A stretch of DNA of 64,000 bases from Octopus sinensis (taxonomy: Eukaryota), in assembly GCF_006345805.1 (NCBI RefSeq), contig NC_043004.1, forward strand, positions 56,234,001-56,298,000, written 5' to 3'. The position numbers and the translations under genes were made by a program. The notes under the pieces were generated by a model. It was not told where the DNA came from and did not search any database. It was given only the letters and a program-made list of their open reading frames with translations. Shown here piece by piece: positions 9,959-62,021 of the stretch (the first letter of the stretch is position 1; each line of letters opens with the position of its first letter).

Positions 9959-10430
9959 GTTATTTTTTTTTTAATTCTCGGTCTGAGATTTTGTACATTT
10001 CCGTTCATGTATTAGTATATCACTGCATGAACGTATAGATGTCCGAATATGCATTTATACTCACTCATGAATTTACTCACAATGATATGGCATGATGTCC
10101 TCGTATAGGCACATCCATGCTAACATTTTGTTGATCAATTCAATGCATATGAATATGCATGTCCGTATATATAAGCTTTTCTTTTACTTCGAAGAGCATG
10201 TATGCATGTATGCACGGGCACTTACGCGCACGTTCATATCTATCTATCTATCTATCTGGTCAATCTCTCATCAACTTCTTCAAGTACCACTTGAAAAGGA
10301 AAGTGAGAGTAGAGAGGCAAGTTTTGTCTAGCGAATGTTTTAAAAAAAGATGGGTGAATGTAGCAAGAATGGCACGTATGAATGACGAAGCCACCTTGAG
10401 CATAGTCCTATGAACCCAGAAATCGAAAAC

Positions 10431-13931: not shown

Positions 13932-14389
13932 TATATGTTTGTGTTTGTATATATACCCATGCCTATTCCCCTTTTTCGTTAGGGATAGCCACAAGACATA
14001 TACCAGGCATTCCATTCATTTCCCAGCTGAAAAAGGCGAGCGCCGTGCTACGCTCGGGTCAAGGCACAGAACGCAACCCCCAATATTAGCATCGGGGCCC
14101 AAGAACATATGCTGGTTTACTCCCGCCGTATGATGCTGGTTCTGTACTCCTTTGAGCAATATCAAACTCACTCATCCATCCACAAACACTCTCCATGGAT
14201 TCCTATCATTTATAAACTATTTTGCCTCTTTCTCTCCAACACCTATAATCACCAAAGCTTTCCTCACTCACTCACTCACTCACTCACTCACTCACTCCCC
14301 ATCCATCCATCCATCCATCCATCCATCCATCCATCCATTCATTCATTCATTCATTCATTCATTCATTCATCCATCCATCCACCCATCCA

Positions 14390-15475: not shown

Positions 15476-15601
15476 AGGTGGGTGGTCGGTAAAATGCAGT
15501 CGCCATTTTCCCTGCATGGCTTAAGTGATTAAAAGAGGCGGCAGCAAGGGACTGGAATCCAGTCCTCGTAATTTCATATTCCTACAAAGACAAGAAATGT
15601 T

Positions 15602-15688
<87 letters not shown>

Positions 15689-15689
<1 letters not shown>

Positions 15690-16095
15690 GGCGCAGGAGT
15701 GGCTGTGTGGTAAGTAGCTTGCTAACCAACCACATCGTTCCGGGTTCAGTCCCACTGCGTGGCATCTTGGGAAAGTGTCTTCTGCTATAGCCCCGGGCCG
15801 ACCAATGCCTTGTGAGTGGATTTGGTAGACGGAAACTGAAAGAAGCCTGTCGTATATATGTATATATATGTATGTGTATGTGTTTGTGTGTCTGTGTTTG
15901 TTCCCCTAGCATTGCTTGACAACCGATGCTGGTGTGTTTACGTCCCTGTAACTTAGCGGTTCGGCAAAAAGAGACCGATAGAATAAGTACTGGGCTTACA
16001 AAAGAACAAGTCCCGGGGTCGAGTTGCTCGACTAAAGGCGGTGCTCCAGCATGGCCGCAGTCAAATGACTGAAACAAGTAAAAGAGTAAAAGAGT
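15689..16095 (+). mobile_element. SINE family A
   Basis: Full-length plus-strand copy between (TA)n tracts. Confidence 0.9.
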
Positions 16096-16113
16096 ATATA
16101 TATATATATATAT

Positions 16114-16403
16114 ATTTACGTCTTAACATACGCAGGCTGCAATAGGCAGTATATAGGCCATACAAAAATAGCTTACGTAACAGGATGGCAGTGCATAAAT
16201 CACAAATTAGAAACCCTGAATACCGGAAAATACCGTTCAGCGGACACATAGATAGATGTGCTGCAAATGTAAATCCGAAATTTACAACTTACCCACTTTA
16301 TAAATTCAGTGACAGCGTAACCTTCACGCAACGCCAAAATAAAGAACTTTATTTCATCAAAAAATTTAGACCAAGTTTGAACACCCTGGGCCAGGAATAT
16401 TAA
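16114..16403 (+). pseudogene. GIY-YIG endonuclease 3' fragment of a Penelope-like element
   Basis: IYVLTYAGCNRQYIGHTK (16114-16167), then after a 1-nt frameshift in an A-run NSLRNRMAVHKSQIR...SGHIDRCA...RQNKELYFIKKFRPSLN*. The GIY..YIG, R..H and E...LN motifs fit PLE GIY-YIG. It is 5'-truncated at (TA)n. Confidence 0.8.
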
Positions 16404-25358: not shown

Positions 25359-26813
25359 TATATTTATCAAATTTAGTGAAATCAAAGGTAAACGGGGCAA
25401 GAACATCAAAGTATTGATTAATTTAAATTAGTTTGCATTTAGGATTAATATTTGACATTTTGCTCCCTTTTTTCTCGTTTTTATTTCAACACTAATATTG
25501 TATTGATGAAAATTATATTGTACATTATATTTAAAAATTTCAGCTTCGCTTCAAATGTGTTTCTTTTGGATGCTATCTCAATGGGATTTTATCCATCTCT
25601 TAAATTAGAACTCAGTTCGGTTTTGCATTGATGCTATTTAATGCAATTTCTAGTGTTAATATTTTTTCTGTGTATGAGGACAGCATACATAACGAAACAA
25701 GTTTGAAGTGCAAATATTTCAGATTTTTCATTGAAACTTTTTATATCACCTACTCCCTTTCCAGGTAAGTCAGACATACATCTGGATGCATTTTCGTACT
25801 TAATGGTGTATCTAGCCATCGCTAAATAATATTAGGACTGACCTACATTATAACCGATAATTACTGATAAATGGGAATATTGGCTAATACCCATGTATCA
25901 GGTTTTCAAGATAAATGCGATGATGAATGATTGCTAGTGACATTTCTTATATGAAGACAAGAAGATATTTGATGTATGATTTTTCAAGGAGACCTTTGGC
26001 GTATAGAGTATCTCTTTGAATTGTATATGAGATACGGTAATTCTTGAAGACGTCCGTCAAAGGAGAAGATCGATATTCTGTGAAAGAGCGGAAATATTAA
26101 GTTAGGTGTATCTTTAAAATTTTGCTTATTAAATAGAGTTGGTGTATGCCTTTAGACCTAAGCCAACACGAGGAAAAACTGCGGATACTTTTATAGATAT
26201 GAATGATATAAATTATTTTATTTTTTATGAATGGCAATGATATCAGAACTTTGACACTACGTTAATATAAGGAGGCCAGATATTTTAATGGAACCTGAAC
26301 GAATAATATGAAAAATGTCAATAAAAGTAGTTGCTCTTACTTCCTCCTGGCAAAACTTTAGATTAAACTTTTTAGCATCTTCAATGATGTTAAAAATAGT
26401 TGTGGTAAAAATAGAAGCTATCTATCAATATGATAGTTTTTTTTTTTACTAAAATGATCAGTGAATTGAAATGGAAGTGGGTGGATGTTTTTAATCGATC
26501 GATTTTCTTTATCATTTTTCTTTAATTTTCCTCTTTTTGATTTTTCCTTAGCCTAAGCTTATAAAAGGAAAATTGATATCAGCCAAGAATACTCACTTAG
26601 AAAACTTTAAATTTTAATTAAGTTTTAAAGATGGTAGCTGCTGCTGCCTTTTCATTGACATTCAAACTTCGTAACGAAGTAAAACGTACACGTATTTTGC
26701 TATATGTAGACGAACAACATATGTGTCTATAAACATCGGTACATGCTTACATAGAATATTCATACATACGCATAATCTGCATATATGCATAATATACTCA
26801 TACGCAATATATA

Positions 26814-27216
26814 TACTCTTTTACTTGTTTCAGTCATTTGACTGCGGCCATGCTGGAGCACCGCCTTTTAGTCGAGCAAATCGACCCCGGGACTCATTCT
26901 TTGTAAGCCCAGTACTTATTCTATCGGTCTCTTTTGCCGAACCGCTAAGTGACGGGGACGTAAACACACCAGCATCGGTTGTCAAGCAATGCTAGCGTGA
27001 CAAACACAGACACACAAACACATACACACAAATATATATATATACATATATACGACAGGCTTCTTTCAGTTTCCGTCTACCAAATCCACTTACAAGGCAT
27101 TGGTCGGCCCGGGGCTATAGCAGAAGACACTTGCCCAAGATGCCACGCAGTGGGACTGAACCCAGAACCATGTGTTTGGTTAGCAAGCTACTTACCTCAC
27201 AGTCACTCTTGCGCCT
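26814..27216 (-). mobile_element. SINE family A
   Basis: Full-length copy. Confidence 0.9.
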
Positions 27217-27298
27217 AAATTATGAAAATCCGTGTTGGTTTGTCATCAGAAGGTCCACATCATTCTGACATTCTCATATATATGTATATAGTGTAAAT

Positions 27299-27954: not shown

Positions 27955-29205
27955 AAGCCTCCTCAGCAAAGATATAGGCATGGAATTTGGCATAGCTAGG
28001 TGAGCAATATTAATCATGAGAAGAGGGCAGGTAGTCAACAACGAAGGCATCCAATTACCAGATGGCCAAACATCAATATTATTGAGAGGAGGGGAGAGTT
28101 ATGAGTATCTAGGAGTATTAGAATCTGACAGAGTACCGACTACAGAAATGAAAGCAGAAATTGAGAAGGTGTACGTGAGAAGGGTGATGAACCTAATGAA
28201 GTTATGGTTCGAATCTAGTGAAGGATGTAAATACTTGGGCAGTATCATTACTTAGATACTCAGAATATTTTGTAGATTAGACAAAAAAAAAAATGAATTA
28301 GCAAAGCTAGACAGAACAAGGAAGGAATTCCTTATGAATGGAGGATTCATCTAAGAGCAGGAGTAGCAAGATTTTACCTTCTTAGAAAGGAAGGTAGAAG
28401 AGGGTTAATATCAGCAGAAGACTGCGTGGAATTAGCTAGAGTAGATATAGACCCCCATGTAGGTAATAGGGAAGAAATTTTATCAAAAGCTGCTAGATGA
28501 ACGGCAAGACGTGGGGAAACCAAAAATCCAAACGAAGTTATAAAACCAGAAAAAAGAATATAAATTTTCTGACCTGCAAGAAAAGGCGTTGCATTGTAGA
28601 TTTCCAAATATAGCTGCATCCAGTAGTTGTCGTGCGACATGATTATGGTTACAGAAAGGAAAGCTAAAGAGGGAGACAGAAAGTTTGTTAGTAGACGCAC
28701 AAGATCAAGCATAAAGAACTGATTGGATAAAAGCTAAGATAGACAAAAACCAGGTAGATTCTCAATGTAGATTATGCAAATCAAAAGAAGAAAGCGTTAA
28801 TCATATAGTAAGTGAATGTAGCATGCTGGCACAGAAATATTACAAAAAAGACATGACAATTTAGTGAGAACAACCCACTGGGAGCTATGTAGAAATCTAG
28901 GATTTGAGCATACTGATAACCGGTATGAACATGAACCTAGGAAAGTACTAGAAAGTAAGAAATACAAGATGTTGTCGGACATTAACATTCAGACTGACAG
29001 AGTAATAGAAGCAAGAAGGTCTCATTTGGTAGTAGAAGATAAAGAAAATGGAAAATGCCAGATAATTGACTTTACAGTCGCAAATGATGAAAGAATTAAT
29101 ATGAGAGGTATAGAAAAAATATCAAGACCTCGCTACTGAATTACAGAGACTATGGAAAATGCGGGTAAAATGTATCCTAGTAGTTATAGGTTTTTTGAGT
29201 GTCTC
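27955..29205 (+). mobile_element. Decayed R4/Dong-like LINE fragment (RT C-terminus, CCHC finger, REL)
   Basis: Fragments SKDIGMEFGIA, ESYEYLGVLE, CRLCKSKEESVNHIVSEC and DINIQTDRVIEARRSHLVV, with many stops and frameshifts. It follows an (ACA/AAT)n tract. Confidence 0.75.
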
Positions 29206-29368
29206 CTCTTTTCCAAATGGGTATGAGCTCAAATTTTTCTTCGTTCAAATGCATATTTTTTGTGCCCGTTGGGCTACTCTGCATAGGTCCGATTGAAGCA
29301 TCGGTCGATCATATGATCCCCTAATGACTTTCTGGAGCTTAGAGTCATCTTCATATATATATATATAT

Positions 29369-32542: not shown

Positions 32543-32692
32543 TTTCCTACTATTTACTATTTATTTTTTATCTACATTATTGATTTTTAGAATAAGGTTT
32601 TTTATAGTATATTTATTTTTTTCTATATGGTTTGAATAACGTCTTTCACTATTGAATTGCTTAACGGAGGTTTTTCTCTAATTTATATACAT

Positions 32693-33114
32693 AGGCGCAG
32701 GAGTGGCTGTGTGGTAAGTAGCTTGCTAACCAACCACATGGTTCCGGATCCAGTCCCACTGCGTGGCATCTTGGGCAAGTGTCTTCTGCTATAGCCCCGG
32801 GCCGACCAATGCCTTGTGAGTGGATTTGGTAGACGGAAACTGAAAGAAGCCTGTCGTATATATGTATATATATATGTATATGTGTGTGTGTGTTTGTGTA
32901 TGTGTGTTTGTCCCCCTAGCATTGCTTGACAACCGATGCTGGTGTGTTTACGTCCCTGTCACTTAGCGGTTCGGCAAAAAGAGACCGATAGAATAAGTAC
33001 TGGGCTTACAAAGAATAAGTCCCCGGGTCGATTTGCTCGACTAAAGGTGGTGCTCCAGCATGGCCGCAGTCAAATGACTGAAACAAGTAAAAGAGTAAAA
33101 GAGAGTAAAAGAGT
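32693..33114 (+). mobile_element. SINE family A
   Basis: Full-length copy. Confidence 0.9.
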
Positions 33115-33188
33115 ATATATTATATATTGTGAAATTTGATTTCGAATTGCTAAATTGAATTTTTCCCTGTAAGTTTGGAATTTTATTT

Positions 33189-36252: not shown

Positions 36253-36300
<48 letters not shown>

Positions 36301-36301
36301 A

Positions 36302-36343
<42 letters not shown>

Positions 36344-36356
36344 ATATATATATATA

Positions 36357-36658
36357 GGGGAGGCGCAATGGCCAAGTGGTTAGGGCAGCGGATTCGCGGT
36401 CGTGGGATCGCAGTTTCGATTCCCAGACCGGGCGTTGTGAGTGTTTATTGAGCGAAAACACCTAAAAGCTCCACCACGCTCCAGCAGGGGGTGGTGGCGG
36501 TCCCTGCTGTACTCTTTCCCCACTCTTTCTCCCAATCTTTCTTCTGTTGGCCTGCTCGCTTAGCCAGCGGGGTGGCGTCATTCGAAGGCTAAAACAATGC
36601 GAACGCATTGTGACCAGCGATGTGTAACTACATCTGATGGACTGGTCGGTCACGTGAT

Positions 36659-36665
<7 letters not shown>
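36357..36665 (+). mobile_element. tRNA-headed SINE, family C (309 bp), left copy
   Basis: A-box-like TGGCCAAGTGG and B-box-like GTTTCGATTCC. Ends in the palindrome TCACGTGATCACGTGA and has (TA)n on both sides. Confidence 0.85.
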
Positions 36666-36713
<48 letters not shown>

Positions 36714-36718
<5 letters not shown>

Positions 36719-36808
36719 TAATATAGATGATTTACAGTCAGATGACCGACAAAATGCTATAATAGCATTTTGTCGGTCATCTGACTGTAAATCATCTATA
36801 TTAATATG
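36714..36808. repeat. 95-bp perfect palindrome inside a (TA)n tract
   Basis: 47-bp arms (36714-36760 and 36762-36808) are exact reverse complements around one A at 36761. Confidence 0.95.
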
Positions 36809-36827
36809 TATATATATATATATATAT

Positions 36828-39800
36828 ATATCACAATCAAGGAACGGCCATAATAGGCCATTCACCCACTAGAAATAACAGCCAAAAAGCTTCAACCGCA
36901 AAATAACATTAATTCCGTAAACCAGGAGAAAATTAAAAAACATTTATCCTGAAATTCCTTATACGATGCACCGTTTCTTCTACTGTTTAATGGTAAACTA
37001 ACCTGATTAAATTAAATCAAGCCAATCTACCATAGGCCCTTAGATTCATCAGTAAGGAATAGCCAAATCGGAACAGATATTTTTCACGAGGCATTCTCGT
37101 CCATGCCTCGCCAATATCTGACCTAAAATTTTCAAATCGTCGCACTCGCGCCAAATTTATCGGCAGCAAATAAATATAAGCCGCCGATTCCATTACGGAA
37201 CCAACCAGAAAATTCATAATTAATCAATATAGGGAGGCAAAAAAAAATTTTGTAGAATTCTTTTGCCCCCAGCGGCCTAGTGGGAAAAAATTAAATAGTC
37301 ATAAACCATTTTTAAGTTCAATATCACAATCAAGGAACGGCCATAATAGGCCATTCACCCACTAGAAATAACAGCCAAAAGCTTCAACCGCAAAATAACA
37401 TTAATTCCGTAAACCAGGAGAAAATTAAAAAACATTTACCCTGAAATTCCTTATACGATGCACCGTTTCTTCTACTGTTTAATGGTAAACTAACCTGATT
37501 AAATTAAATCAAGCCAATCTACCATAGGCCCTTAGATTCATCAGTAAGGAATAGCCAAATCGGAACAGATATTTTTCACGAGGCATTCTCGTCCATGCCT
37601 CGCCAATATCTGACCTAAAATTTTCAAATCGTCGCACTCGCGCCAAATTTATCGGCAGCAAATAAATATAAGCCGCCGGTTCCATTACGGAACCAACCAG
37701 AAAATTCATAATTAATCAATATAGGGAGGCAAAAAAAAATTTTGTAGAATTCTTTTGCCCCCAGCGGCCTAGTGGGAAAAAATTAAATAGTCATAAACCA
37801 TTTTTAAGTTCAATATCACAATCAAGGAACGGCCATAATAGGCCATTCACCCACTAGAAATAACAGCCAAAAAGCTTCAACCGCAAAATAACATTAATTC
37901 CGTAAACCAGGAGAAAATTAAAAAACATTTACCCTGAAATTCCTTATACGATGCACCGTTTCTTCTACTGTTTAATGGTAAACTAACCTGATTAAATTAA
38001 ATCAAGCCAATCTACCATAGGCCCTTAGATTCATCAGTAAGGAATAGCCAAATCGGAACAGATATTTTTCACGAGGCATTCTCGTCCATGCCTCGCCAAT
38101 ATCTGACCTAAAATTTTCAAATCGTCGCACTCGCGCCAAATTTATCGGCAGCAAATAAATATAAGCCGCCGATTCCATTACGGAACCAACCAGAAAATTC
38201 ATAATTAATCAATATAGGGAGGCAAAAAAAAATTTTGTAGAATTCTTTTGCCCCCAGCGGCCTAGTGGGAAAAAATTAAATAGTCATAAACCATTTTTAA
38301 GTTCAATATCACAATCAAGGAACGGCCATAATAGGCCATTCACCCACTAGAAATAACAGCCAAAAAGCTTCAACCGCAAAATAACATTAATTCCGTAAAC
38401 CAGGAGAAAATTAAAAAACATTTACCCTGAAATTCCTTATACGATGCACCGTTTCTTCTACTGTTTAATGGTAAACTAACCTGATTAAATTAAATCAAGC
38501 CAATCTACCATAGGCCCTTAGATTCATCAGTAAGGAATAGCCAAATCGGAACAGATATTTTTCACGAGGCATTCTCGTCCATGCCTCGCCAATATCTGAC
38601 CTAAAATTTTCAAATCGTCGCACTCGCGCCAAATTTATCGGCAGCAAATAAATATAAGCCGCCGATTCCATTACGGAACCAACCAGAAAATTCATAATTA
38701 ATCAATATAGGGAGGCAAAAAAAATTTTGTAGAATTCTTTTGCCCCCAGCGGCCTAGTGGGAAAAAATTAAATAGTCATAAACCATTTTTAAGTTCAATA
38801 TCACAATCAAGGAACGGCCATAATAGGCCATTCACCCACTAGAAATAACAGCCAAAAAGCTTCAACCGCAAAATAACATTAATTCCGTAAACCAGGAGAA
38901 AATTAAAAAACATTTACCCTGAAATTCCTTATACGATGCACCGTTTCTTCTACTGTTTAATGGTAAACTAACCTGATTAAATTAAATCAAGCCAATCTAC
39001 CATAGGCCCTTAGATTCATCAGTAAGGAATAGCCAAATCGGAACAGATATTTTTCACGAGGCATTCTCGTCCATGCCTCGCCAATATCTGACCTAAAATT
39101 TTCAAATCGTCGCACTCGCGCCAAATTTATCGGCAGCAAATAAATATAAGCCGCCGATTCCATTACGGAACCAACCAGAAAATTCATAATTAATCAATAT
39201 AGGGAGGCAAAAAAAAAATTTTGTAGAATTCTTTTGCCCCCAGCGGCCTAGTGGGAAAAAATTAAATAGTCATAAACCATTTTTAAGTTCAATATCACAA
39301 TCAAGGAACGGCCATAATAGGCCATTCACCCACTAGAAATAACAGCCAAAAGCTTCAACCGCAAAATAACATTAATTCCGTAAACCAGGAGAAAATTAAA
39401 AAACATTTACCCTGAAATTCCTTATACGATGCACCGTTTCTTCTACTGTTTAATGGTAAACTAACCTGATTAAATTAAATCAAGCCAATCTACCATAGGC
39501 CCTTAGATTCATCAGTAAGGAATAGCCAAATCGGAACAGATATTTTTCACGAGGCATTCTCGTCCATGCCTCGCCAATATCTGACCTAAAATTTTCAAAT
39601 CGTCGCACTCGCGCCAAATTTATCGGCAGCAAATAAATATAAGCCGCCGATTCCATTACGGAACCAACCAGAAAATTCATAATTAATCAATATAGGGAGG
39701 CAAAAAAAAATTTTGTAGAATTCTTTTGCCCCCAGCGGCCTAGTGGGAAAAAATTAAATAGTCATAAACCATTTTTAAGTTCAATATCACAATCAAGGAA

Positions 39801-40779
39801 CGGCCATAATAGGCCATTCACCCACTAGAAATAACAGCCAAAAAGCTTCAACCGCAAAATAACATTAATTCCGTAAACCAGGAGAAAATTAAAAAACATT
39901 TACCCTGAAATTCCTTATACGATGCACCGTTTCTTCTACTGTTTAATGGTAAACTAACCTGATTAAATTAAATCAAGCCAATCTACCATAGGCCCTTAGA
40001 TTCATCAGTAAGGAATAGCCAAATCGGAACAGATATTTTTCACGAGGCATTCTCGTCCATGCCTCGCCAATATCTGACCTAAAATTTTCAAATCGTCGCA
40101 CTCGCGCCAAATTTATCGGCAGCAAATAAATATAAGCCGCCGATTCCATTACGGAACCAACCAGAAAATTCATAATTAATCAATATAGGGAGGCAAAAAA
40201 AATTTTGTAGAATTCTTTTGCCCCCAGCGGCCTAGTGGGAAAAAAATTAAATAGTCATAAACCATTTTTAAGTTCAATATCACAATCAAGGAACGGCCAT
40301 AATAGGCCATTCACCCACTAGAAATAACAGCCAAAAAGCTTCAACCGCAAAATAACATTAATTCCGTAAACCAGGAGAAAATTAAAAAACATTTACCCTG
40401 AAATTCCTTATACGATGCACCGTTTCTTCTACTGTTTAATGGTAAACTAACCTGATTAAATTAAATCAAGCCAATCTACCATAGGCCCTTAGATTCATCA
40501 GTAAGGAATAGCCAAATCGGAACAGATATTTTTCACGAGGCATTCTCGTCCATGCCTCGCCAATATCTGACCTAAAATTTTCAAATCGTCGCACTCGCGC
40601 CAAATTTATCGGCAGCAAATAATATAAGCCGCCGATTCCATTACGGAACCAACCAGAAAATTCATAATTAATCAATATAGGGAGGCAAAAAAAAAATTTT
40701 GTAGAATTCTTTTGCCCCCAGCGGCCTAGTGGGAAAAAATTAAATAGTCATAAACCATTTTTAAGTTCAATATCACAAT
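36828..40779 (-). mobile_element. Eight tandem ~493-bp units of an HHR-bearing retroelement (antisense arm)
   Basis: Units start at 36828, 37321, 37813, 38306, 38798, 39292, 39784 and 40277, with 10 extra nt at the end. They differ almost only in homopolymer length. Each unit has the HHR on the minus strand (copy 1: 36954-37060). Confidence 0.9.
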
Positions 40780-41271
40780 TAATTATGAATTTTCTGGTTG
40801 GTTCCGTAATGGAATCGGCGGCTTATATTTATTTGCTGCCGATAAATTTGGCGCGAGTGCGACGATTTGAAAATTTTAGGTCAGATATTGGCGAGGCATG
40901 GACGAGAATGCCTCGTGAAAAATATCTGTTCCGATTTGGCTATTCCTTACTGATGAATCTAAGGGCCTATGGTAGATTGGCTTGATTTAATTTAATCAGG
41001 TTAGTTTACCATTAAACAGTAGAAGAAACGGTGCATCGTATAAGGAATTTCAGGGTAAATGTTTTTTAATTTTCTCCTGGTTTACGGAATTAATGTTATT
41101 TTGCGGTTGAAGCTTTTTGGCTGTTATTTCTAGTGGGTGAATGGCCTATTATGGCCGTTCCTTGATTGTGATATTGAACTTAAAAATGGTTTATGACTAT
41201 TTAATTTTTTCCCACTAGGCCGCTGGGGGCAAAAGAATTCTACAAAATTTTTTTTTGCCTCCCTATATTGA

Positions 41272-41279
<8 letters not shown>
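40778..41279 (+). mobile_element. One full inverted (sense) unit of the same element
   Basis: Circularly permuted reverse complement of the array unit. ATTAATTAT occurs at both 40778 and 41271 (493 bp apart) and is followed by (TA)n. Confidence 0.9.
40942..41048 (+). ncRNA. Type I hammerhead ribozyme motif (variant stem II base)
   Basis: Stem I ATTCCTTA/TAAGGAAT (8 bp), CTGATGA at 40950-56, A.A then TCTA/TAGA stem II, GAAA at 41025-28, stem III CGG-TGCA-TCG, and a GTA triplet. Predicted cut is after 41040. Confidence 0.8.
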
Positions 41280-41304
<25 letters not shown>

Positions 41305-41311
<7 letters not shown>

Positions 41312-41613
41312 ATCACGTGACCGACCAGTCCATCAGATGTAGTTACACATCGCTGGTCACAATGCGTTCGCATTGTTTTAGCCTTCGAATGACGCCACCC
41401 CGCTGGCTAAGCGAGCAGGCCAACAGAAGAAAGATTGGGAGAAAGAGTGGGGAAAGAGTACAGCAGGGACCGCCACCACCCCCTGCTGGAGCGTGGTGAA
41501 GCTTTTAGGTGTTTTCGCTCAATAAACACTCACAACGCCCGGTCTGGGAATCGAAACCGCGATCCCACGACCGCGAATCCGCTGCCCTAACCACTTGGCC
41601 ATTGCGCCTCCCC
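41305..41613 (-). mobile_element. SINE family C, right copy (inverted)
   Basis: Reverse complement of 36357-36665 with 2 substitutions found by eye in 309 bp. Confidence 0.9.
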
Positions 41614-42334
41614 TATATATATACATAAACCATAACAAATTAAATTTTCCTTGTATCGATGGTTAACATCGTTATACATTTAAACTACTAGTTTGTACCT
41701 CAATACAAAAAATACAACGATGACCGGTATTCCCCATTTAAGTTTTGGTTTCTCAAAATGAGGTTGTAATGTACCACGGAGATATTATTTAGTTGAAATC
41801 TGTTAGCTTCTATAAACGTTCGCAAATGTTTTAGGATGATCAGTTCAGCCATTGATATCGCTAGAAATAGAAAAAAGAAGTGGAATGTTTTATCGTCTTT
41901 CCATTGTTAGTATCGAAATGTATATTTAATGAACAATTTGGCTGTTTGGTTATGTGCCACAAATTACGAGACAAAAATCAGTTGGAAATATTCCATAAAA
42001 CTTTATCTATGTTGGCTTTAACAGTATTTGTCGAAATCTGGGATTCTCGAAATAAAAAAAAAATAAAAAAGTCTCATTTATACGAGATGCTTTATGTTGT
42101 GAGTAATGACGTATTCATTCGTCGAGAGAAAGCGGAAGTGAGGTGAGCAAAACATATTTATTATTGTTTGAAAGAAATAAAAGTTAGTTTAATAGCTAAT
42201 TGTTATTTACATTAAATGCTTTCGCTATTTTGTAATTATATTTTGATACATAACGTTTGAATCGATCAGATACAACAATCATGGATTATTATCAGATGGG
42301 GACCATTGCGCTTTACAACTTTAGCGTACAGTAT

Positions 42335-42741
42335 TACTCTTTTACTTTTTTCAGTCATTTGACTGCGGCCATGCTGGAGCACCGCCTTTTAGTCGAGCAA
42401 ATCGATCCCGGGACTTATTCTTTGTAAGACCAGTACTTATTCTATCGGTCTCTTTTGCCGAACCGCTAAGTAACGGGGATGTGAACACACCAGCATCGGT
42501 TGTCAAGCAATGCTAGCGGGACAAACACAGACACACAAACATATACACACACACTTATATATACATATACATATATACGACAGGCTTCTTTCAGTTTCCG
42601 TCTACCAAATCCACTCACAAGACATTGGTCGGCCCGGGGCTATAGCAGAAGACACTTGCCCAAGATGCCACGCAGTGGGACTGAACCCGGAACCATGTGG
42701 TTGGTTAGCAAGCTACTTACCACACAGCCACTCCTGCGCCT
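42335..42741 (-). mobile_element. SINE family A
   Basis: Full-length copy. Confidence 0.9.
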
Positions 42742-42985
42742 ACATATAAATATTTTGCAAAAAAATGTTTTTGCGTCTGTTTATGAATTACAACTAAGAT
42801 AATGAGGCTTACAGCATTGATGACAGCGATACAGAATGTATAATAAGTAAGAACACCGTATTTCGTTATGCAACCATGATATACTACGAAGTATGCTAAA
42901 CACTTTAAAAGTCAAAACTATGTTCTACTCTGTTAGCTTTTAAATCGGTGTTGTCTCTAATATCTATAGAAAATCAGTGAGAATG

Positions 42986-47100: not shown

Positions 47101-47390
47101 CCGTTTACGTTCAAATTATTGGTCATTAATATAATATAACGCTAGAGGAATTATTCTGCATATTTGCTGGTGTATAACTGATAGGTTACGCTTCGTCTTA
47201 ATCAAATCCCGCAAAGGCTGATGAGGTCTAAAATGTTAGAATTTCACACGTTGCTTATTTTCACGGACATTGAGGTGGTAGACTGACAGGATGGATTGAG
47301 AGTTAGAGAAAATTTGTTGCAGTATTTTGTTAAAACTTTTCATTCTGAGTTCAAGACACGTCAAGGCCATCACTGAATTTCATTATATCA

Positions 47391-51595: not shown

Positions 51596-52200
51596 AACAG
51601 TGCGGTGTATAAACTGTCGTCTCTAAAGTACGCAAAACTGGAAATAACACTGACATTTAATTTTAACAGATATATTTACCAAAATTACATAAAAATATCT
51701 GAAATACTAAAGAGTAAATTTATTAAATAAAATCGCCATTGCTTCAACCATGGCTTCTGGACAACTTCAGAGTATCCTGCAACTCTTCTGGAGGGACTCG
51801 TTGTTTAAGTGTGTGAATGCTGTCATAAGCCTTGCCTTCAGTTCATCTTTGGTGTTATAAGGAGTTTGTTCGTCTCTCGCTCAACTGCACCACACACATA
51901 ATAATCAAGGGAGTTGCAGTCTGGAGTGTCAGATGACCAGATGTTAGGGGCGATGCGTTCGCAGAAATTATCTGACAGCTATGACTGGGTTCTCCCGCTT
52001 GTGTCACATGGTGCCGAGTCCTGTAACCAGACATAGGGTCTTCTAGCAACCACCCTCTTGACTCGGGGCAGCACTACCTCATCCAAGCACCTGATGTAGG
52101 CCTCTGTGTTGAGTGTGAGGCCGTGTGGGAAGAGGAATGGCGGCATAACCTCACTATAACTAGTGATCACTCCAAACGCCATGATGTTGTTTGATGTTTA
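51596..52200 (-). mobile_element. Tc1/mariner transposase remnant
   Basis: RPYVWLQDSAPCDTS and IWSSDTPDCNSLDYYVCGAVERETN (QQD..P.H and WP..SPD.NPLD motifs). Confidence 0.75.
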
Positions 52201-52323
52201 ATTTTTATTACTCTCGGTAATACATAGATTTATATATATATATCTATATATGTATGTGCATACAGACACACACACATATCTATATATGTATATGTATGTA
52301 TGTATATATATATAATATATATA

Positions 52324-52377
<54 letters not shown>

Positions 52378-52419
52378 GGTGTCACAGATGACACTGATGT
52401 GTTTCACTCTATAATAACT

Positions 52420-52720
52420 TCCTTAACTTTACAAATAAGTGTATGAAATTTTCATAGAATATAAAGGACATAATAGAAATTAATATGCACTAGCCAAATC
52501 CAGGTTGGTGCAGTTTGGGGAAAGTGAAGGCCAGTTGACATTGCCGTAGCGGGAGATTATTATTTCTCTACAGCACAGCCGTAGTGACTGCAGTGTTTCC
52601 CTTGCGGTATGAGCAGTTGCCCTATCTTGCTGGAACCATGTGTGAGGTCTACTTTGAACGGCCTTCACGTTCTCCAGACTTCCTTGTGGGGTTACCTGGA
52701 AGAGAGCATTTATCTCAAGA
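52420..52720 (-). mobile_element. Second Tc1/mariner transposase remnant
   Basis: TWFQQDRATAHTARE...NWPSLSPN. Boundaries are approximate. Confidence 0.7.
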
Positions 52721-52939
52721 AACCGGGGAAGCTTGTGCAACTGAAGGAGAACATCAATAGGGAAATACTCGTCAAGTGGAGTAAAAGTATGAGAATTTCT
52801 CCATGAAAACGTTGCAAGTTTTGGCGGGTGTGCGAAGCCGAAATGACTGCCATTTAAGTGATGTCCTTTATCATAAGTGTTGTAGTGTTGTTGCAAAACT
52901 TGATTAGTGCATATTAAGTTCCATTATGATCTTTTCATT

Positions 52940-53348
52940 TTACTCTTTTACTTATTTTAGTTATTTGACTGTGGCCATGCTGGAGCACCGTCTTTTTATT
53001 CGAGCAAAGTACCCCTAGGACTTATTCTTTGTAAGCCTAGTACTTATTCTATCGGTTTCTTTTGCCGAACCGCTTAGTTACGTGGATGTAAACACACCAG
53101 CATCGGTTGTCAAGCCATGTTGGTGGGACGAACACAGACACACAAACATATACACACACTCACACATATTTATATATATATATATATATATACGACGGGC
53201 TTCTTTCAGTTTCCGTCTACCAAATCCACTCACAAGGCTTTGGTCGGCCCGAGGTTATAGTAGAAGTCACTTGCTCAAGTTGCCACGCAGTGGGACTGAA
53301 CCCGAAACCATGTGGTTGGTAAGCAAGCTACTTACCACACAGTCACTC
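52940..53348 (-). mobile_element. SINE family A
   Basis: Near full-length, slightly diverged copy. Confidence 0.9.
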
Positions 53349-53388
53349 ATATTAAAAACTGAAACCTCACAGTGTCTTTTGGGACATC

Positions 53389-53434
<46 letters not shown>

Positions 53435-53537
53435 GTTTTGGATTTGGTTTGCAAGGTTCTTTATATGAGTTCGTGTGTTGAAGCATATTCTGTTGTGTCT
53501 GGGGAGAGTCATTTTCTTTTTGTGCCTTATAATGTAA

Positions 53538-53876: not shown

Positions 53877-53880
<4 letters not shown>

Positions 53881-54425
53881 CAATATAAGGAATGGCCATA
53901 ATAGGTCATTCGACTCACTAGAAAGAGCAGACAAACTCAAACCCCTAAATAATTGTAATTCTGAAATTGAAAGAGAAATAAAAACATTTACCCTTTTCAT
54001 ATCTGGACTATGCATAGTTTCGACAAACTATATTTTCTGGTTAGAAGACCGCGCGGTGGCGGTGGATTTTGAAAATTTAGGGCATATGGACTGGAGGCTT
54101 ATTTGCTGTCGCCTCGTGGACATTTGCTCGTCCTCGGCTTCTCTGCTGACGAGACACGCCAGTTGTAAATAAATTTTATTTAATTTAATTAATTTGTTTA
54201 GGAAAGTTTGTCGAAACTATGCATAGTCTAGAGATGAATAGGGTAAAGGTTTTTATTTCTCTTTCAATTTCAGAATTACAACTATTTAGCGGTTTGAGTT
54301 GTCTGCTCTTTCTAGTGAGTCGAATGGCCTTATATTGTTGAATGTATATTATATAGTCTTTGACTATCTTTTCTTTCTCACTAGACCGTTGGTAGCGGAG
54401 AATTTTTTTGGTACGCTTATATTTA

Positions 54426-54428
<3 letters not shown>
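53877..54428 (+). mobile_element. HHR-bearing retroelement, second family member (inverted ~150-bp arm plus ~400-bp sense unit)
   Basis: The left arm 53877-54029 is the reverse complement of ~54206-54345. The sense unit 54030-54428 is collinear with 40778-41279 (TTTTCTGGTT, TTTGAAAATTT, GGGTAAA, CTAGTG.G, TGACTAT, CACTAG, ATTAAT). It has (TA)n on both sides. Confidence 0.85.
54140..54234 (+). ncRNA. Canonical type I hammerhead ribozyme
   Basis: Stem I TCTCTG/TAGAGA, CTGACGA at 54146-52, stem II GACA/TGTC, GAAA at 54213-16, stem III CTA-TGCA-TAG, and a GTC triplet. Predicted cut is after 54228. Confidence 0.9.
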
Positions 54429-54471
<43 letters not shown>

Positions 54472-59829: not shown

Positions 59830-61898
59830 GTACATAAACAATAGAGAGAGACCATCACCTATGATGTAGGGACTTTCGTGGTCAAGAGTCCCTGAAGGTG
59901 TTTCAAAGATTTCCCTAAAGATCCTCTTGCACACATAGAGGCGGGCGTCCTCTTTCGCCATACAGTAAGTGAACCTTTTCTTTACAGTCTCTGTAAGGCT
60001 ATCACAGTAGAAGTGTTAAGGTTTAATCAAGAAATAGCGATAGAAGTGTCAAAATAGGAGACCTAGTTCGGAAACTAGAAGGGATACTAGCAGAAACATC
60101 GCTCCTGAGTGATTCTTCAACTACAGTTACGAAGGTTGCATTGTCGGAGCTAGGGCACGTGTTGTAACGCACGAGTGGATGAAATTCGTTCGAGAGGCCC
60201 AGGTGGCAGAGGGGCAACATGGAAACAAATGCACAAGTCAGTTTCCGATGAGCTGTCCGGGCGTGTGCTATTTGAGTCGAAGCAGATGTGTTCGGCATTT
60301 CAACGGTACTTTTCTGCATTGAACGGCAGGCACGGCGTTTCCGAGACGTGGATGAATTTTACAACTAACCTCGATGGCCAGTCATAACTTCGGGCTGGGA
60401 ATGCGGAGTTCTGCAACATGTCATTAACATCCGACGACATACGTGACGATATGTTTGGTTGCATAAAGGAAAATTATCCGGGATTGGATGATCTGCTGAC
60501 AAGATCTTTGGGTAGCGGACAGACGGACCGGTTAAACTGTTCAGAGACTAGTTTGATCCTGACCTCCAGGTGGACAAGAACTGGAATGAGTTGTCGAGAA
60601 GGGCGGCCAGTCTCATCCAGAAATGGACCGAGAAGAAGCTGCACCCGAAAGATCGATGGGAGGTGGAAAATGCAGACGTCACCTCTATCGCATACTACTG
60701 CTTACCCGTCATCCTTGCTCTGCTTCATTACTGAACGGGCAGGAGCGATTGGCCTTATGCTTCCTGTGGGAAGGTTTCGATGGAGCGACGGTCCATCTAT
60801 TGTCAGCAGTCGTTGAGTGGAGGATTGGGCATGCTTTAGATAATGATGCGCAGACATGAGTTGAGGCTACCACAATCCAGCGATTCCTGATCACTGTTTG
60901 TCAAACAGGATTTTCCACAATTTCGTCTCATTGACGGGACTGCAATCTTTAATCACTCGTAGACCGTGTCGGGGCGTTTGGCACCTGGACTATAGCAAAG
61001 CACTCACCGTCGTCAACCAGTCGGGCAATATTGTTGGTGGCTATTCTACCTTGGAGTTCTATAAGGTATTAGTGTCGGGCAAGTGCGACAACGTCCTGTG
61101 GCAAACACTAGTCGTCGAAAGGGTCATTTGGTAGACCGTTTTTTGGAAGATTTACTGGATGGAACCAAGGGATAATTTCCAGAACTCCCTAGCCAGTCGG
61201 GCTACTGCGTTGCACTACCGGTTCCAGATAAGCTCTACAGACACAGAAGTGCTCTCGGGTGTGTTTTGTTTGGAGTTGCATGCGATGAAACTGTTCTGCA
61301 TTCACTTTTCCTGTGTCCGGGCATTATTAACTTGTGGAGTTTTCTCAATCAGCTCTTACCGCAAATAGGCCAAATCCGACTCACGGCTGAATCCATCATG
61401 AGAATCGCCCGATGACTTTCTACTGCCAGGAAGAGCAGGCAAATTGCCTCTGCATGGTGACTATGACCAAAGAGGCACTGTGGAATGATCTGAAGATATA
61501 TACTTTGGTCTTCAACCAAGCACCCATCGATTTTTTTTTCAAGTTTTATTTGAAAAAGAAAGAGAGTTTAGAGAGTTGTTGAAAGTGGTGAATGTGACAC
61601 GGATGGTCATCGTGAATACGCCTAATATGAGTATGCACCTATCGGCCGCAGGATAATGTGAGGAGTGGAATGCCAGCCAGAGTTTCCCTGTGTGATCGGG
61701 GTGTTCAGGACATGTGAGATTCCTTGGTTGCTCCGTGGTGGTACTCCTCACGTTTGGGAAGCTTTCTTAATCTTAATAATTTTATTGTTAATCATAATTA
61801 TTTTATTGTTTAGATAACTTTTTATGTAAACCTCGGCTGTCCTTTGTTTTCCATTGTCCATTTTGTTTGATGTGCAGTCGTTGTGGCTAATGAAGAAG
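59830..61898 (+). mobile_element. Decayed L1/Tx1-like LINE ORF2 plus 3' UTR
   Basis: Fragments DELSGRVLFESKQMCSAFQRYFSAL and LTSDDIRD..GCIKENYPGLDDL (SPGLDG-like). GC-richer than the flanks and ends at (ATT)n. The 5' boundary is approximate. Confidence 0.6.
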
Positions 61899-61900
61899 GA

Positions 61901-61936
<36 letters not shown>

Positions 61937-61975
61937 ATTATCATTATTATCATTATTATCATTATAATAATAATA

Positions 61976-62021
<46 letters not shown>

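What the first reader, a model, noticed from the sequence alone, without database searches (positions are those of the whole stretch)
36828..41279. 493-bp tandem array whose unit carries a hammerhead ribozyme: candidate cephalopod retrozyme / non-autonomous Penelope-like element
Seen: 8 near-identical units plus 1 inverted unit. Each contains stem I (8 bp), CUGAUGA, stem II, GAAA, stem III with a palindromic UGCA loop, and a GUA triplet. No autonomous coding capacity is present, and both ends abut (TA)n. Known: tandem non-coding monomers with one type I HHR each are the hallmark of animal non-LTR retrozymes, which self-cleave to monomers and form circRNAs. Type I HHRs with short stem III and palindromic loops also occur in Penelope-like elements. 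Inference: this is a very young insertion whose multimeric transcript would be cut into ~493-nt RNAs. I cannot tell whether the family is already catalogued.
Basis: partly seen in the sequence, partly recalled or inferred. Interest (0 to 1): 0.95.

Follow-up and report, generated by a model that had tools for sequence, protein, structure and literature searches.

The report
Hammerhead-ribozyme retrozyme array, Penelope-type insertion
This is a young, non-coding mobile element of an already known kind: a 493-base unit with a self-cleaving hammerhead RNA motif, repeated eight times plus one inverted copy, with the insertion layout typical of Penelope-like retrotransposons.

Summary
There are 8.0 tandem units of 493 bp (36828-40779, 99-100% identical) and one inverted unit (40780-41279), both abutting (TA)n. 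Every unit carries the same type I hammerhead motif. A structure descriptor finds it in all 9 units and never in 100 shuffled windows.

A diverged relative, E2 (53878-54430), keeps the whole catalytic core. It differs from the unit by six compensatory double changes in the stems.

The layout is Penelope-like. Both outer ends are element 3' ends, at two recurrent termini T1 and T2, and the 5' ends meet head-to-head.

Deleting 36828-41279 in silico restores a near-perfect ~836-nt palindrome of two tail-to-tail SINE copies. So the block is a discrete, recent insertion into (TA)n.

Caveats:
- No Rfam hammerhead model matches, even at E<=10.
- The array's ribozyme has an A·A mismatch where G10.1-C11.1 is normally conserved.
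- Helix II is unusually long at 60-68 nt.
- Cleavage and circular RNA are untested.
- The host organism ("cephalopod") could not be verified.
- No autonomous partner lies in the window.

Verdict: a new member of a known kind (animal non-LTR retrozyme, a non-autonomous Penelope-like element). Interest is moderate.

The parts
36828..40779 (-). 8.0 head-to-tail units of 493 bp, with the ribozyme (sense) strand on the - strand. The element 3' end (terminus T1, ...GATTGTGATAT) is at 36828 and abuts (TA)n. The 5' end is at 40779.
40780..41279 (+). One unit of 500 nt in the opposite orientation (sense on +). Its 5' end at 40780 is joined head-to-head to the array. Its 3' end (terminus T2, ...TATATTGATTAAT) is at 41279 and abuts (TA)n.
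40942..41048 (+). Type I hammerhead motif of the inverted unit. Stem I is 40942-40949 / 41041-41048. CUGAUGA is 40950-40956. Helix II is 40957-41024, with A·A at 10.1/11.1. GAAA is 41025-41028. Helix III is 41028-41039 with a UGCA loop. GUA is 41038-41040, and the predicted cut is after 41040.
40403..40509 (-). Hammerhead motif of array unit 1 (H17 = 40411).
39910..40016 (-). Hammerhead motif of array unit 2 (H17 = 39918).
39417..39523 (-). Hammerhead motif of array unit 3 (H17 = 39425).
38924..39030 (-). Hammerhead motif of array unit 4 (H17 = 38932).
38432..38538 (-). Hammerhead motif of array unit 5 (H17 = 38440).
37939..38045 (-). Hammerhead motif of array unit 6 (H17 = 37947).
37446..37552 (-). 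Hammerhead motif of array unit 7 (H17 = 37454).
36954..37060 (-). Hammerhead motif of array unit 8 (H17 = 36962).
36804..36827 (.). Left remnant of the (TA)n target tract.
41280..41305 (.). Right remnant of the (TA)n target tract. Left plus right remnants add up to about the length of the (TA)n in the uninterrupted palindrome arm.
54029..54430 (+). E2, an older diverged relative: the sense copy. It has a canonical hammerhead at 54140-54234 (CUGACGA, G10.1-C11.1, GAAAC, UGCA loop, GUC, cut after 54228). It ends at a T2-type terminus (...ATTTATTAAT) next to (AT)n.
53878..54028 (-). E2: an inverted, 5'-truncated copy (151 nt) joined head-to-head to the sense copy. Its 3' end is a T1-type terminus (...TTGTTGAA) next to (TA)n.
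36343..36760 (+). Context, not part of the element: the left arm of the host palindrome, made of a tRNA-like SINE, (AT)n and a 42-nt core.
41306..41627 (-). Context, not part of the element: the SINE of the right palindrome arm. The arm is 36762-36827 + 41280-41627 and is interrupted by the insertion.

Best explanation
Window 36828-41279 is one discrete, recent insertion of a non-coding, hammerhead-bearing retroelement. It belongs to the animal non-LTR retrozyme class, meaning a non-autonomous derivative of Penelope-like elements (PLEs).

Shown by sequence:
- There are 8 tandem units plus 1 unit in inverse orientation.
- The two element 3' ends face outward into a (TA)n tract, and the two 5' ends are joined head-to-head.
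- Every unit has a type I hammerhead motif with a weak 4-bp helix III capped by a palindromic UGCA loop.

Inferred mechanism:
1. The sense strand is transcribed as a multimer.
2. Neighbouring ribozymes pair through a 12-bp intermolecular helix III (a double hammerhead) and cut after GUA. [quoted passage not shown]
3. A host tRNA ligase circularises these RNAs.
4. A PLE reverse transcriptase / GIY-YIG endonuclease supplied in trans cuts both strands of AT-rich DNA. It primes cDNA synthesis from both ends at internal start sites, seen here as termini T1 and T2.
5. A multimeric or circular template gives the tandem copies, and the two cDNAs are joined at their 5' ends.

It is uncertain, roughly even odds, whether the ribozyme of this array still cleaves, because the G10.1-C11.1 pair is replaced by A·A.
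For: Array and inverted copy.

Motif statistics: the motif is identical in all 9 units, and the descriptor gives 0 hits in 100 shuffles.

Conservation in relative E2:
- E2 keeps every invariant core base (CUGANGA, GAAA, A15.1-U16.1, H17).
- E2 has G10.1-C11.1.
- E2 differs from the unit by 6 paired positions changed on both sides and still paired: 3 in stem I, 2 in helix II and 1 in helix III.

Double-hammerhead design:
- Helix III as a monomer gives -1.2 kcal/mol (unit) and -0.3 kcal/mol (E2).
- The 12-bp dimer duplex gives -17.5 kcal/mol (unit) and -15.9 kcal/mol (E2).

Strand-specific RNA structure:
- The sense monomer folds at -156.7 kcal/mol (z = -7.55). The antisense folds at -107.5 kcal/mol (z = -4.6).
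- The distal helix II hairpin gives -22.1 kcal/mol on the sense strand and -6.7 on the antisense, owing to G·U pairs.

PLE-type layout: in two independent insertions the architecture is head-to-head, the 3' ends lie at T1/T2, and the flanks are (TA)n.

Discrete insertion: deleting 36828-41279 restores a palindrome arm that matches the other arm except for 2 transitions and 4 nt of (TA)n.

No coding capacity. Unit GC is 36.7%.

Literature:
- PLE insertions are tandem plus an inverted 5'-truncated copy, carry a tail, and are biased to (TA)n (PMC8557442).
- A PLE protein cuts and extends both strands at AT-rich DNA and starts reverse transcription at two internal sites (PMC11167929).
- Type I hammerheads in tandem repeats are retrozymes expressed as circular RNAs (PMC7229834).
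- Retrozymes derive from PLE pseudo-LTRs. Family consensus lengths are 51-972 bp, and 75% of families have a maximum of 7 repeat units (bioRxiv 10.64898/2026.07.22.740005).
Against: - No Rfam hammerhead model matches the units or E2, even at E<=10 on short slices. The 60-68-nt helix II probably explains this, but I could not test that.
- The units have A·A at 10.1/11.1, a pair reported as highly conserved in PLE hammerheads (PMC4209133).
- The lowest-energy fold of a single motif sequesters the core: -35.8 kcal/mol against -28.0 for the catalytic fold.
- Conservation rests on only two diverged sequences. No further homologues were found: the metagenome scan gave one chance hit and the viral collection none.
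- No PLE RT/EN gene is in the window.
- T1 and T2 are about 105 nt apart, whereas published PLE tails are 30-40 bp.
- In the one PLE tested in vitro, hammerhead cleavage was not needed for insertion (PMC11167929). The circular-RNA step is therefore not required to explain the array.
- There are no expression data.
Confidence: 0.75

Rival explanations
1. The element is PLE-derived, but the array grew at the DNA level. One or two retrotransposed units carried a relic, inactive hammerhead. Unequal crossing-over or replication slippage then amplified them, as with ordinary satellite DNA. In this view no self-cleavage or circular RNA is involved today.
For: - The A·A at 10.1/11.1 may cripple the ribozyme.
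- Units are almost identical, as expected from recent DNA-level homogenisation.
- The array is an almost exact integer number of units, 8.016.
- Hammerhead cleavage is dispensable for PLE insertion in vitro (PMC11167929).
Against: - Apart from 10.1/11.1, all the other invariant core bases and all three helices are intact in every unit, while the family has diverged by about 25% elsewhere.
- The sense RNA is far more structured than the antisense.
- PLEs and retrozymes typically insert as tandems directly (PMC8557442, PMC7229834).
Confidence: 0.15
2. The element is a DNA transposon of the MITE or foldback type with TA target duplication. E2 looks like a 0.55-kb element with about 150-bp terminal inverted repeats, and the big array is flanked by 351-bp inverted repeats.
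For: - E2 has inverted arms of about 150 nt.
- The array is flanked by the inverted pair 36343-36693 / 41277-41627 at 99% identity.
- All of these elements sit in (TA)n.
Against: - E2's inverted arms are not terminal. The sense copy runs about 85 nt past the repeat to the T2 end, which is homologous to internal unit sequence.
- The 351-bp repeats are arms of a pre-existing palindrome whose centre (36761) lies outside the array. That palindrome closes perfectly when the array is removed.
- A cut-and-paste element does not explain 8 tandem units or a conserved hammerhead.
Confidence: 0.03
3. The structure is an assembly artefact. The copy number or the inverted unit would then result from mis-joined or chimeric long reads in a repeat.
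For: - Units are 99-100% identical, and most differences are homopolymer lengths, which are typical long-read errors.
- PLE tandem/inverted structures are known to trouble assemblies (PMC8557442).
Against: - The head-to-head junction is not a simple read-foldback palindrome.
- The older element E2 has the same head-to-head layout with diverged arms, so the layout is biological.
- The flanks close into a precise empty site.
- At least two substitutions distinguish individual units.
Confidence: 0.05
4. The hammerhead is a chance resemblance in an AT-rich satellite.
For: - No Rfam hit.
- The 10.1/11.1 pair is non-canonical.
Against: - The descriptor gives 0 hits in 100 shuffles.
- A canonical version of the motif sits at the homologous position in E2, with compensatory changes.
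Confidence: 0.02

Closest known systems
Animal non-LTR retrozymes (for example Mytilus galloprovincialis repeats of about 350-390 bp, Acropora 220-240 bp, axolotl about 350 bp; PMC7229834; bioRxiv 10.64898/2026.07.22.740005)
   Same: - Non-coding, low-GC monomers repeated head-to-tail.
- One type I hammerhead per monomer.
- Unit length and copy number within the published ranges (51-972 bp; 75% of families have a maximum of 7 repeat units).
- A proposed link to PLEs.
   Different: - Helix II is 60-68 nt with a 19-bp hairpin, against about 4-8 bp in described motifs.
- The array's ribozyme has A·A at 10.1/11.1.
- No recognisable loop 1 / loop 2 contacts.
- Rfam does not detect it.
- Expression and circular RNA are untested here.
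- An inverted unit is attached.
Hammerheads of Penelope-like element pseudo-LTRs and dimeric hammerheads of newt/axolotl satellite repeats (PMC4209133, PMC7229834)
   Same: - Type I topology.
- A short, unstable helix III with a palindromic loop that can form an extended helix III in a dimer.
- A larger than usual helix II.
- Occurrence of motifs on opposite strands 100-700 bp apart.
   Different: - PLE min-HHRs usually have a bulged base between positions 9 and 10.1 and keep G10.1-C11.1. E2 has no bulge.
- The units have a 1x1 A·A loop instead of G10.1-C11.1.
- Helix III here is 4 bp plus a tetraloop, not absent or 1-2 bp.
Insertion architecture of EN+ Penelope-like elements (Penelope/Poseidon, Neptune, Naiad; PMC8557442; Poseidon PAc biochemistry PMC11167929)
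   Same: - Partial or full tandems.
- An inverted copy at the 5' end, 5'-truncated in E2.
- Alternative 3' termini downstream of the hammerhead.
- Insertion in AT-rich / (TA)n DNA.
- Consistent with cleavage and extension of both target strands.
   Different: - No RT/GIY-YIG ORF, so the element is non-autonomous.
- The distance between the two termini is about 105 nt (about 85 nt in E2), against a 30-40-bp tail.
- The termini here are TA-like, so microhomology priming cannot be excluded. PAc starts at a site not homologous to the target.
Plant LTR retrozymes (PMC4918200)
   Same: Non-autonomous, hammerhead-bearing, and proposed to move through circular RNA.
   Different: Plant elements have type III hammerheads in LTRs, a primer binding site and polypurine tract, 4-bp duplications, GC above 55% and Gypsy partners. 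None of these is seen here.

Membership tests
Hammerhead ribozyme, type I | Invariant core: C3 U4 G5 A6 N7 G8 A9, G12 A13 A14, the A15.1-U16.1 pair, and H17 not G | tested here: met
   The core is CUGAUGA...GAAA...U-A in all 9 units and CUGACGA...GAAA...U-C in E2.
Hammerhead ribozyme, type I | Three helices around the core, with helix I open-ended (type I) | tested here: met
   In the units, stem I is 8 bp, helix II has a 4-bp base and a 19-bp distal hairpin, and helix III is 4 bp. E2 has 6/4/4 bp.
Hammerhead ribozyme, type I | G10.1-C11.1 pair closing helix II (highly conserved; PMC4209133) | tested here: not met
   The 493-bp units have A·A at these positions, so they pass only the relaxed descriptor. 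E2 has G-C.
Hammerhead ribozyme, type I | Match to curated Rfam hammerhead covariance models | tested here: not met
   No hammerhead family was reported at the gathering threshold or at E<=10 on 6-kb, 0.6-kb and 0.2-kb slices. The likely cause is the 60-68-nt helix II, which I could not test.
Hammerhead ribozyme, type I | Helices supported by compensatory changes among homologues | tested here: met
   Six pairs are changed on both sides and still paired between the unit and E2. Only two diverged sequences were available, so support is limited.
Hammerhead ribozyme, type I | Site-specific self-cleavage in Mg2+ | not testable with these tools
   This needs in vitro transcription of monomer and dimer constructs.
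Animal non-LTR retrozyme | Head-to-tail tandem monomers of tens to hundreds of bp | tested here: met
   8.0 copies of 493 bp. The published range is 51-972 bp (bioRxiv 10.64898/2026.07.22.740005).
Animal non-LTR retrozyme | One type I hammerhead per monomer, all on the same strand | tested here: met
   There are 8 motifs on the - strand at 492-493-nt spacing and 1 on the + strand in the inverted unit.
Animal non-LTR retrozyme | No coding capacity; no LTR, primer binding site or polypurine tract; low GC | tested here: met
   The longest ORF within one unit is 66-69 aa, and the 66-aa ORF has no homologue or Pfam family. GC is 36.7%.
Animal non-LTR retrozyme | Expressed as monomeric linear and circular RNA | not testable with these tools
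   No transcriptome for this organism was reachable.
Penelope-like element (as a non-autonomous derivative) | ORF with a telomerase-like RT and a GIY-YIG endonuclease | tested here: not met
   No such ORF is in the element. None was seen by eye among the window's ORF translations. Nine ORFs chosen from elsewhere in the window gave no PLE RT or GIY-YIG family in Pfam. The element can therefore only be non-autonomous.
Penelope-like element (as a non-autonomous derivative) | Tandem copies plus an inverted copy adjacent to the 5' end | tested here: met
   Head-to-head junctions lie at 40779/40780 and at about 54028/54029, and the 3' ends face outward in both insertions. See PMC8557442.
Penelope-like element (as a non-autonomous derivative) | Insertion in AT-rich / (TA)n DNA | tested here: met
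   Both insertions are embedded in (TA)n. The empty site is reconstructed.
Penelope-like element (as a non-autonomous derivative) | Two alternative 3' termini ('tail') downstream of the hammerhead | tested here: inconclusive
   T1 lies 134 nt and T2 239 nt after the cut site. Each is used once in each of the two insertions. The spacing of about 105 nt exceeds the published 30-40 bp (PMC11167929).
Penelope-like element (as a non-autonomous derivative) | Sequence homology of the unit to the pseudo-LTR of an autonomous PLE in the same genome | not testable with these tools
   The genome is not available, and no homologues were found in the searchable collections.

The most novel reading that the evidence does not exclude
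The locus may be a base-resolution natural record of how a retrozyme array is inserted. A built-in empty site (the uninterrupted palindrome arm) shows a single block with both ends being element 3' ends at two fixed internal start sites. Each cDNA is an almost exact whole number of units (8.016 and 1.014). That would be in-genome evidence that retrozyme tandems are made by PLE-type priming from both strands on a multimeric or circular RNA. In addition, the family amplified very recently although its hammerhead has A·A in place of G10.1-C11.1. Either this is a new active natural core variant carrying a 68-nt helix II, or self-cleavage is dispensable for mobilisation in vivo.
Probability: 0.25. 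Interest if true: 0.55.

Novelty: new member of a known kind. Interest (0 to 1): 0.4.

Why it matters
Hammerhead-bearing tandem repeats (animal retrozymes) and their link to Penelope-like elements are already described. This locus therefore adds a family member, not a new principle.

It is still useful in three ways:
- It is a clean, very young example with an internal empty site. The junctions (3' ends outward, head-to-head 5' ends, two recurrent termini, (TA)n target) tie a retrozyme array to the Penelope-type insertion mechanism recently characterised in vitro.
- It shows that standard Rfam/Infernal screening misses hammerheads with very long helix II, so such families are probably under-counted.
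- It supplies a natural A·A variant at 10.1/11.1, next to a canonical relative. This makes a simple test of whether ribozyme activity is needed for amplification.

Tried and rejected
- **Rfam scans.** I ran the whole window at the gathering threshold and three slices at E<=10. There was no hammerhead hit. The only hits were weak miRNA-hairpin matches on the palindrome centre 36719-36803 and noise.
- **External homologues.** A conserved-block pattern gave one hit in the metagenome contigs (L001). On reading it has no CUGANGA and no stems, so it is chance. The viral contigs gave none.
- **Protein searches.** Searches with the 66-aa unit ORF and with a SINE-derived ORF found nothing.
- **Organism identification.**
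  - A LINE-tail ORF (7136-7600) has its best hit at 87% identity, to a Logan contig of run SRR7158634.
  - Its named hits, at about 60% identity, come from a sea cucumber (Holothuria), a sea anemone (Exaiptasia) and stony corals (Oculina, Montipora).
  - No paper mentions that run, so "cephalopod" remains unverified.
- **ARAGORN.** It finds no tRNA in the window. The SINE head is only tRNA-like by its A and B boxes, read by eye.
- **Motif at 47218-47327.** A CTGATGA...TGCA match here lacks GAAA/helix III geometry and failed the descriptor.
- **MAFFT on the two hammerheads.** It mis-registered the core, so pair changes were tabulated from a manual register.
- **Composite transposon idea.** The idea that the 351-bp inverted flanks make the whole 5.3 kb a transposon with terminal inverted repeats was rejected by the empty-site reconstruction.
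- **Helitron ends.** 5'-TC and 3'-CTRR ends are not present at the boundaries (read).

Full report
**1. The observation**

Tandem Repeats Finder reports one array at 36828-40779 with period 493, 8.0 copies and 99% matches. blastn with one unit finds eight direct copies at 99.2-100% identity and one copy in reverse orientation at 40778-41279. The inverted-repeat scan gives arms of up to 502 nt at 100% complementarity.

Differences between units are almost all homopolymer lengths. At least two substitutions also exist: 37679, seen in that alignment, and 36946 in the partial terminal unit.

(TA)n tracts abut both ends. The longest ORF within one unit is 66-69 aa; a 105-aa stop-to-stop frame spans the head-to-head junction. 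The 66-aa ORF has no protein homologue and no Pfam family. Unit GC is 36.7%.

**2. The hammerhead motif**

All nine units contain the identical string:

ATTCCTTA-CTGATGA-[68 nt]-GAAAC-GG-TGCA-TCG-TA-TAAGGAAT

The parts read as follows:
- Stem I is 8 bp.
- The 5' core is CUGAUGA.
- Helix II follows.
- The 3' core is GAAA.
- Helix III is ACGG/UCGU with a UGCA loop.
- The cleavage triplet is GUA.

H17 is at 41040 on the + strand. On the - strand it is at 40411, 39918, 39425, 38932, 38440, 37947, 37454 and 36962.

I wrote a structure descriptor in the style used by the groups that discovered these motifs. It requires stem I of at least 5 bp, CUGANGA, helix II of at least 4 bp, GAAA, helix III of at least 3 bp ending in U, and H not G. 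It found no hit on either strand in 100 dinucleotide-preserving shuffles of the window.

Three caveats were not in the finding:
- The strict descriptor fails on the units. Positions 10.1/11.1 are A·A instead of the G-C pair reported as highly conserved (PMC4209133). The units pass only when that one pair is allowed to be mismatched.
- Helix II is 68 nt, with a 4-bp base, internal loops and a 19-bp hairpin.
- No Rfam hammerhead model matches. This holds at the gathering threshold on the whole window and at E<=10 on slices of 6 kb, 0.6 kb and 0.2 kb.

**3. A diverged relative in the same window**

blastn and nhmmer find one further family member, E2, at 53878-54430. It is only about 75% identical to the unit where alignable.

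At the homologous position it has a fully canonical type I hammerhead:

CTCTG-CTGACGA-G ACA...[60-nt helix II in all]...TGT C-GAAAC-TA-TGCA-TAG-TC-TAGAG

It passes the strict descriptor at 54146-54228. Its only core differences from the unit are at the permitted variable positions (N7: U/C; H17: A/C) and at 10.1/11.1 (G-C in E2, A·A in the unit).

Six base pairs differ on both sides and remain paired: three in stem I, two in helix II and one in helix III. With about 25% divergence elsewhere, this argues that the hammerhead is a selected feature of the family and not a chance match. The evidence is limited to two sequences.

**4. Design of the ribozyme and of the RNA**

Helix III is marginal as a monomer, at -1.2 kcal/mol for the unit and -0.3 for E2. 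The 12-nt helix III segment is self-complementary. Two copies can form a 12-bp duplex of -17.5 kcal/mol (unit) or -15.9 kcal/mol (E2).

This is the classical double-hammerhead arrangement described for newt and axolotl repeats and for PLE motifs (PMC4209133, PMC7229834). In line with it, the lowest-energy fold of an isolated motif hides part of the core (UGAUG paired with CAUCG). That fold has -35.8 kcal/mol against -28.0 for the catalytic fold.

The structure is specific to the sense strand:
- The 493-nt sense monomer folds at -156.7 kcal/mol, with shuffles at -117.9 +/- 5.1 (z = -7.55).
- The antisense folds at -107.5 kcal/mol (z = -4.6).
- The distal helix II hairpin gives -22.1 kcal/mol in sense RNA but -6.7 in antisense, because it relies on G·U pairs.

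The strand bearing the ribozyme is thus the one shaped as an RNA.

**5. Architecture of the insertions**

The sense strand of the 8-unit array is the - strand. Its 3' end is at 36828 and its 5' end at 40779. The single inverted unit has its 5' end at 40780 and its 3' end at 41279.

Both outer ends of the block are therefore element 3' ends, and the two 5' ends are joined head-to-head.

E2 has the same plan. An inverted, 5'-truncated copy of 151 nt (53878-54028) is joined head-to-head to a near-complete sense copy (54029-54430).

The same two 3' termini recur in both insertions:
- T1 reads ...GATTGTGATAT in the array and ...TTGTTGAA in E2's inverted copy, a 4-nt offset.
- T2 reads ...TATATTGATTAAT in the inverted unit and ...ATTTATTAAT in E2's sense copy.
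- T1 lies 134 nt after the cleavage site, and T2 lies 239 nt after it.

Each piece of the main insertion is an almost exact whole number of units, 8.016 and 1.014. E2's sense copy is about one unit long.

**6. An internal empty site**

The array is flanked by a 351-nt inverted repeat (36343-36693 / 41277-41627, 99%). It consists of a tRNA-like SINE plus (TA)n, and these are the only two copies of that SINE in the window.

Joining the flanks of the block (36761-36827 + 41280-41640) gives a sequence that mirrors the left arm (36330-36761). The two differ by two transitions and a 4-nt difference in (TA)n length over about 418 nt.

The host site was therefore a near-perfect ~836-nt palindrome centred on 36761. 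It consists of two tail-to-tail SINE copies, about 50 nt of (TA)n in each arm and a 42-nt unique core.

This has four consequences:
- The SINE flanks are not part of the element.
- 36828-41279 is a discrete insertion into the (TA)n of one arm.
- The insertion is younger than the palindrome, whose arms are only about 0.5% apart.
- Any target duplication is no larger than a few bases of (TA)n.

**7. What it is and how it probably works**

These features match published descriptions:
- Animal non-LTR retrozymes are non-coding, low-GC tandem monomers with one type I hammerhead each. [quoted passage not shown]
- Family consensus lengths are 51-972 bp, 75% of families have a maximum of 7 repeat units, and the monomers are related to PLE pseudo-LTRs (bioRxiv 10.64898/2026.07.22.740005).
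- PLE insertions are partial tandems with an inverted 5'-truncated copy at the 5' end. They carry a "tail" at one end and are biased towards microsatellites, including (TA)n (PMC8557442).
- A purified PLE protein cleaves and extends both strands at AT-rich DNA. It starts reverse transcription at two internal sites downstream of the hammerhead (PMC11167929).

My best explanation is a non-autonomous PLE-type retroelement. It was inserted by priming from both strands of a broken (TA)n tract on a multimeric or circular RNA template, and the two cDNAs were joined at their 5' ends.

Only the sequence anatomy is shown. Transcription, double-hammerhead cleavage into 493-nt RNAs, circularisation by a host ligase and reverse transcription by a PLE enzyme in trans are all inferred. 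In vitro, hammerhead cleavage was not needed for PLE insertion (PMC11167929). Together with the A·A at 10.1/11.1, this leaves open whether this array's ribozyme is active. I put that at about even odds.

**8. Rivals**

- DNA-level amplification of a relic unit remains possible (0.15).
- A MITE or foldback transposon is disfavoured. E2's inverted arms are not terminal, and the large inverted flanks belong to a palindrome that closes without the array.
- A simple assembly foldback is unlikely. The junction is not symmetric, and the older E2 shows the same layout with diverged arms. Copy number still needs long reads.
- Chance resemblance is excluded for practical purposes.

**9. What could not be done**

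- No homologues were found outside the window.
- No PLE RT/EN gene was seen in the window's ORF translations, and nine selected ORFs gave no such Pfam family. The only RT hit is an RVT_1 fragment at 15027-15290, whose FADD motif I read, from memory, as LINE-like.
- The source organism was not identified, so "cephalopod" is unverified.
- Two literature searches found no paper describing a cephalopod hammerhead or retrozyme: "hammerhead ribozyme" + cephalopod (4 papers, 2 listed) and retrozyme + octopus (3 papers, 2 listed). The genome's repeat library could not be consulted.

**10. Verdict**

This is a new member of a known kind, not a new kind. Interest is moderate at 0.4. Its value lies in the clean junctions and empty site, in showing that Rfam screening misses this hammerhead, and in the natural A·A core variant.

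Noticed in passing
window 36343-36827 + 41280-41627 (centre 36761): The host site of the insertion is itself odd. It is a near-perfect ~836-nt palindrome made of two tail-to-tail copies of a tRNA-like SINE (A and B boxes read by eye; ARAGORN and Rfam do not call a tRNA). Each arm also has about 50 nt of (TA)n, and there is a 42-nt unique core. The arms differ by 2 transitions, and these are the only copies of this SINE in the window. The origin is unexplained: it could be an inverted duplication at a break, a foldback element, or two insertions.
   Followed up: partly
window 36719-36803: The palindrome centre is an 85-nt perfect hairpin. It gives weak sub-threshold Rfam matches to several miRNA precursor families (mir-5728 at 54 bits against a gathering score of 100). 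These matches probably reflect only the generic long hairpin.
   Followed up: partly
window 53878-54430: A second, older member of the same family (E2) is present, with a canonical hammerhead and the same head-to-head layout. Its two inverted arms are about 92% identical by eye. The right arm has lost a 19-nt segment (CTATTATGGCCATTCC... region) that forms the 3' half of the stem-loop just upstream of terminus T1.
   Followed up: yes
window 9575-10035, 15585-16122, 26675-27265, 32664-33136, 42325-42799, 53019-53465 (and others): A different, abundant short interspersed repeat occurs at least six times in both orientations. It shows up as recurring pseudo-ORF translations such as ...RQASFSFRLPNPLTRHWSARGYSRRHLPKMPRSGTEPGTMWLVSKLLTTQPLLRL. 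No protein-database match was found.
   Followed up: partly
window 51858-52923 (-): Broken ORFs contain WFQQDRATAHTA and similar strings. From memory these resemble a mariner/Tc1-type transposase remnant. Pfam gave no hit on the two pieces tested.
   Followed up: partly
window 7136-7600 (+), 28004-29293 (+), 15027-15290 (-): These are retrotransposon remnants. A conserved C-terminal ORF (best database hit 87% identity, to a Logan contig of SRR7158634; named hits at about 60% come from a sea cucumber, a sea anemone and stony corals). There is also a reverse-transcriptase fragment (Pfam RVT_1, E = 8.6e-6, below the cut-off). None of them looks Penelope-like.
   Followed up: partly
window 36253-36355 and throughout: The window is extremely rich in microsatellites, including (TATC)n, (TA)n, (CA)n and (CT)n. 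All three mobile-element insertions examined (the SINE pair, the array and E2) sit inside (TA)n, which suggests that (TA)n tracts act as insertion nests in this genome.
   Followed up: no
window 14001-16000 and 60001-62000: Two 2-kb stretches have clearly higher GC (44%) than the rest (about 30-37%). The first overlaps the RT fragment. The second has ORFs of 77-142 aa with no Pfam hit.
   Followed up: no
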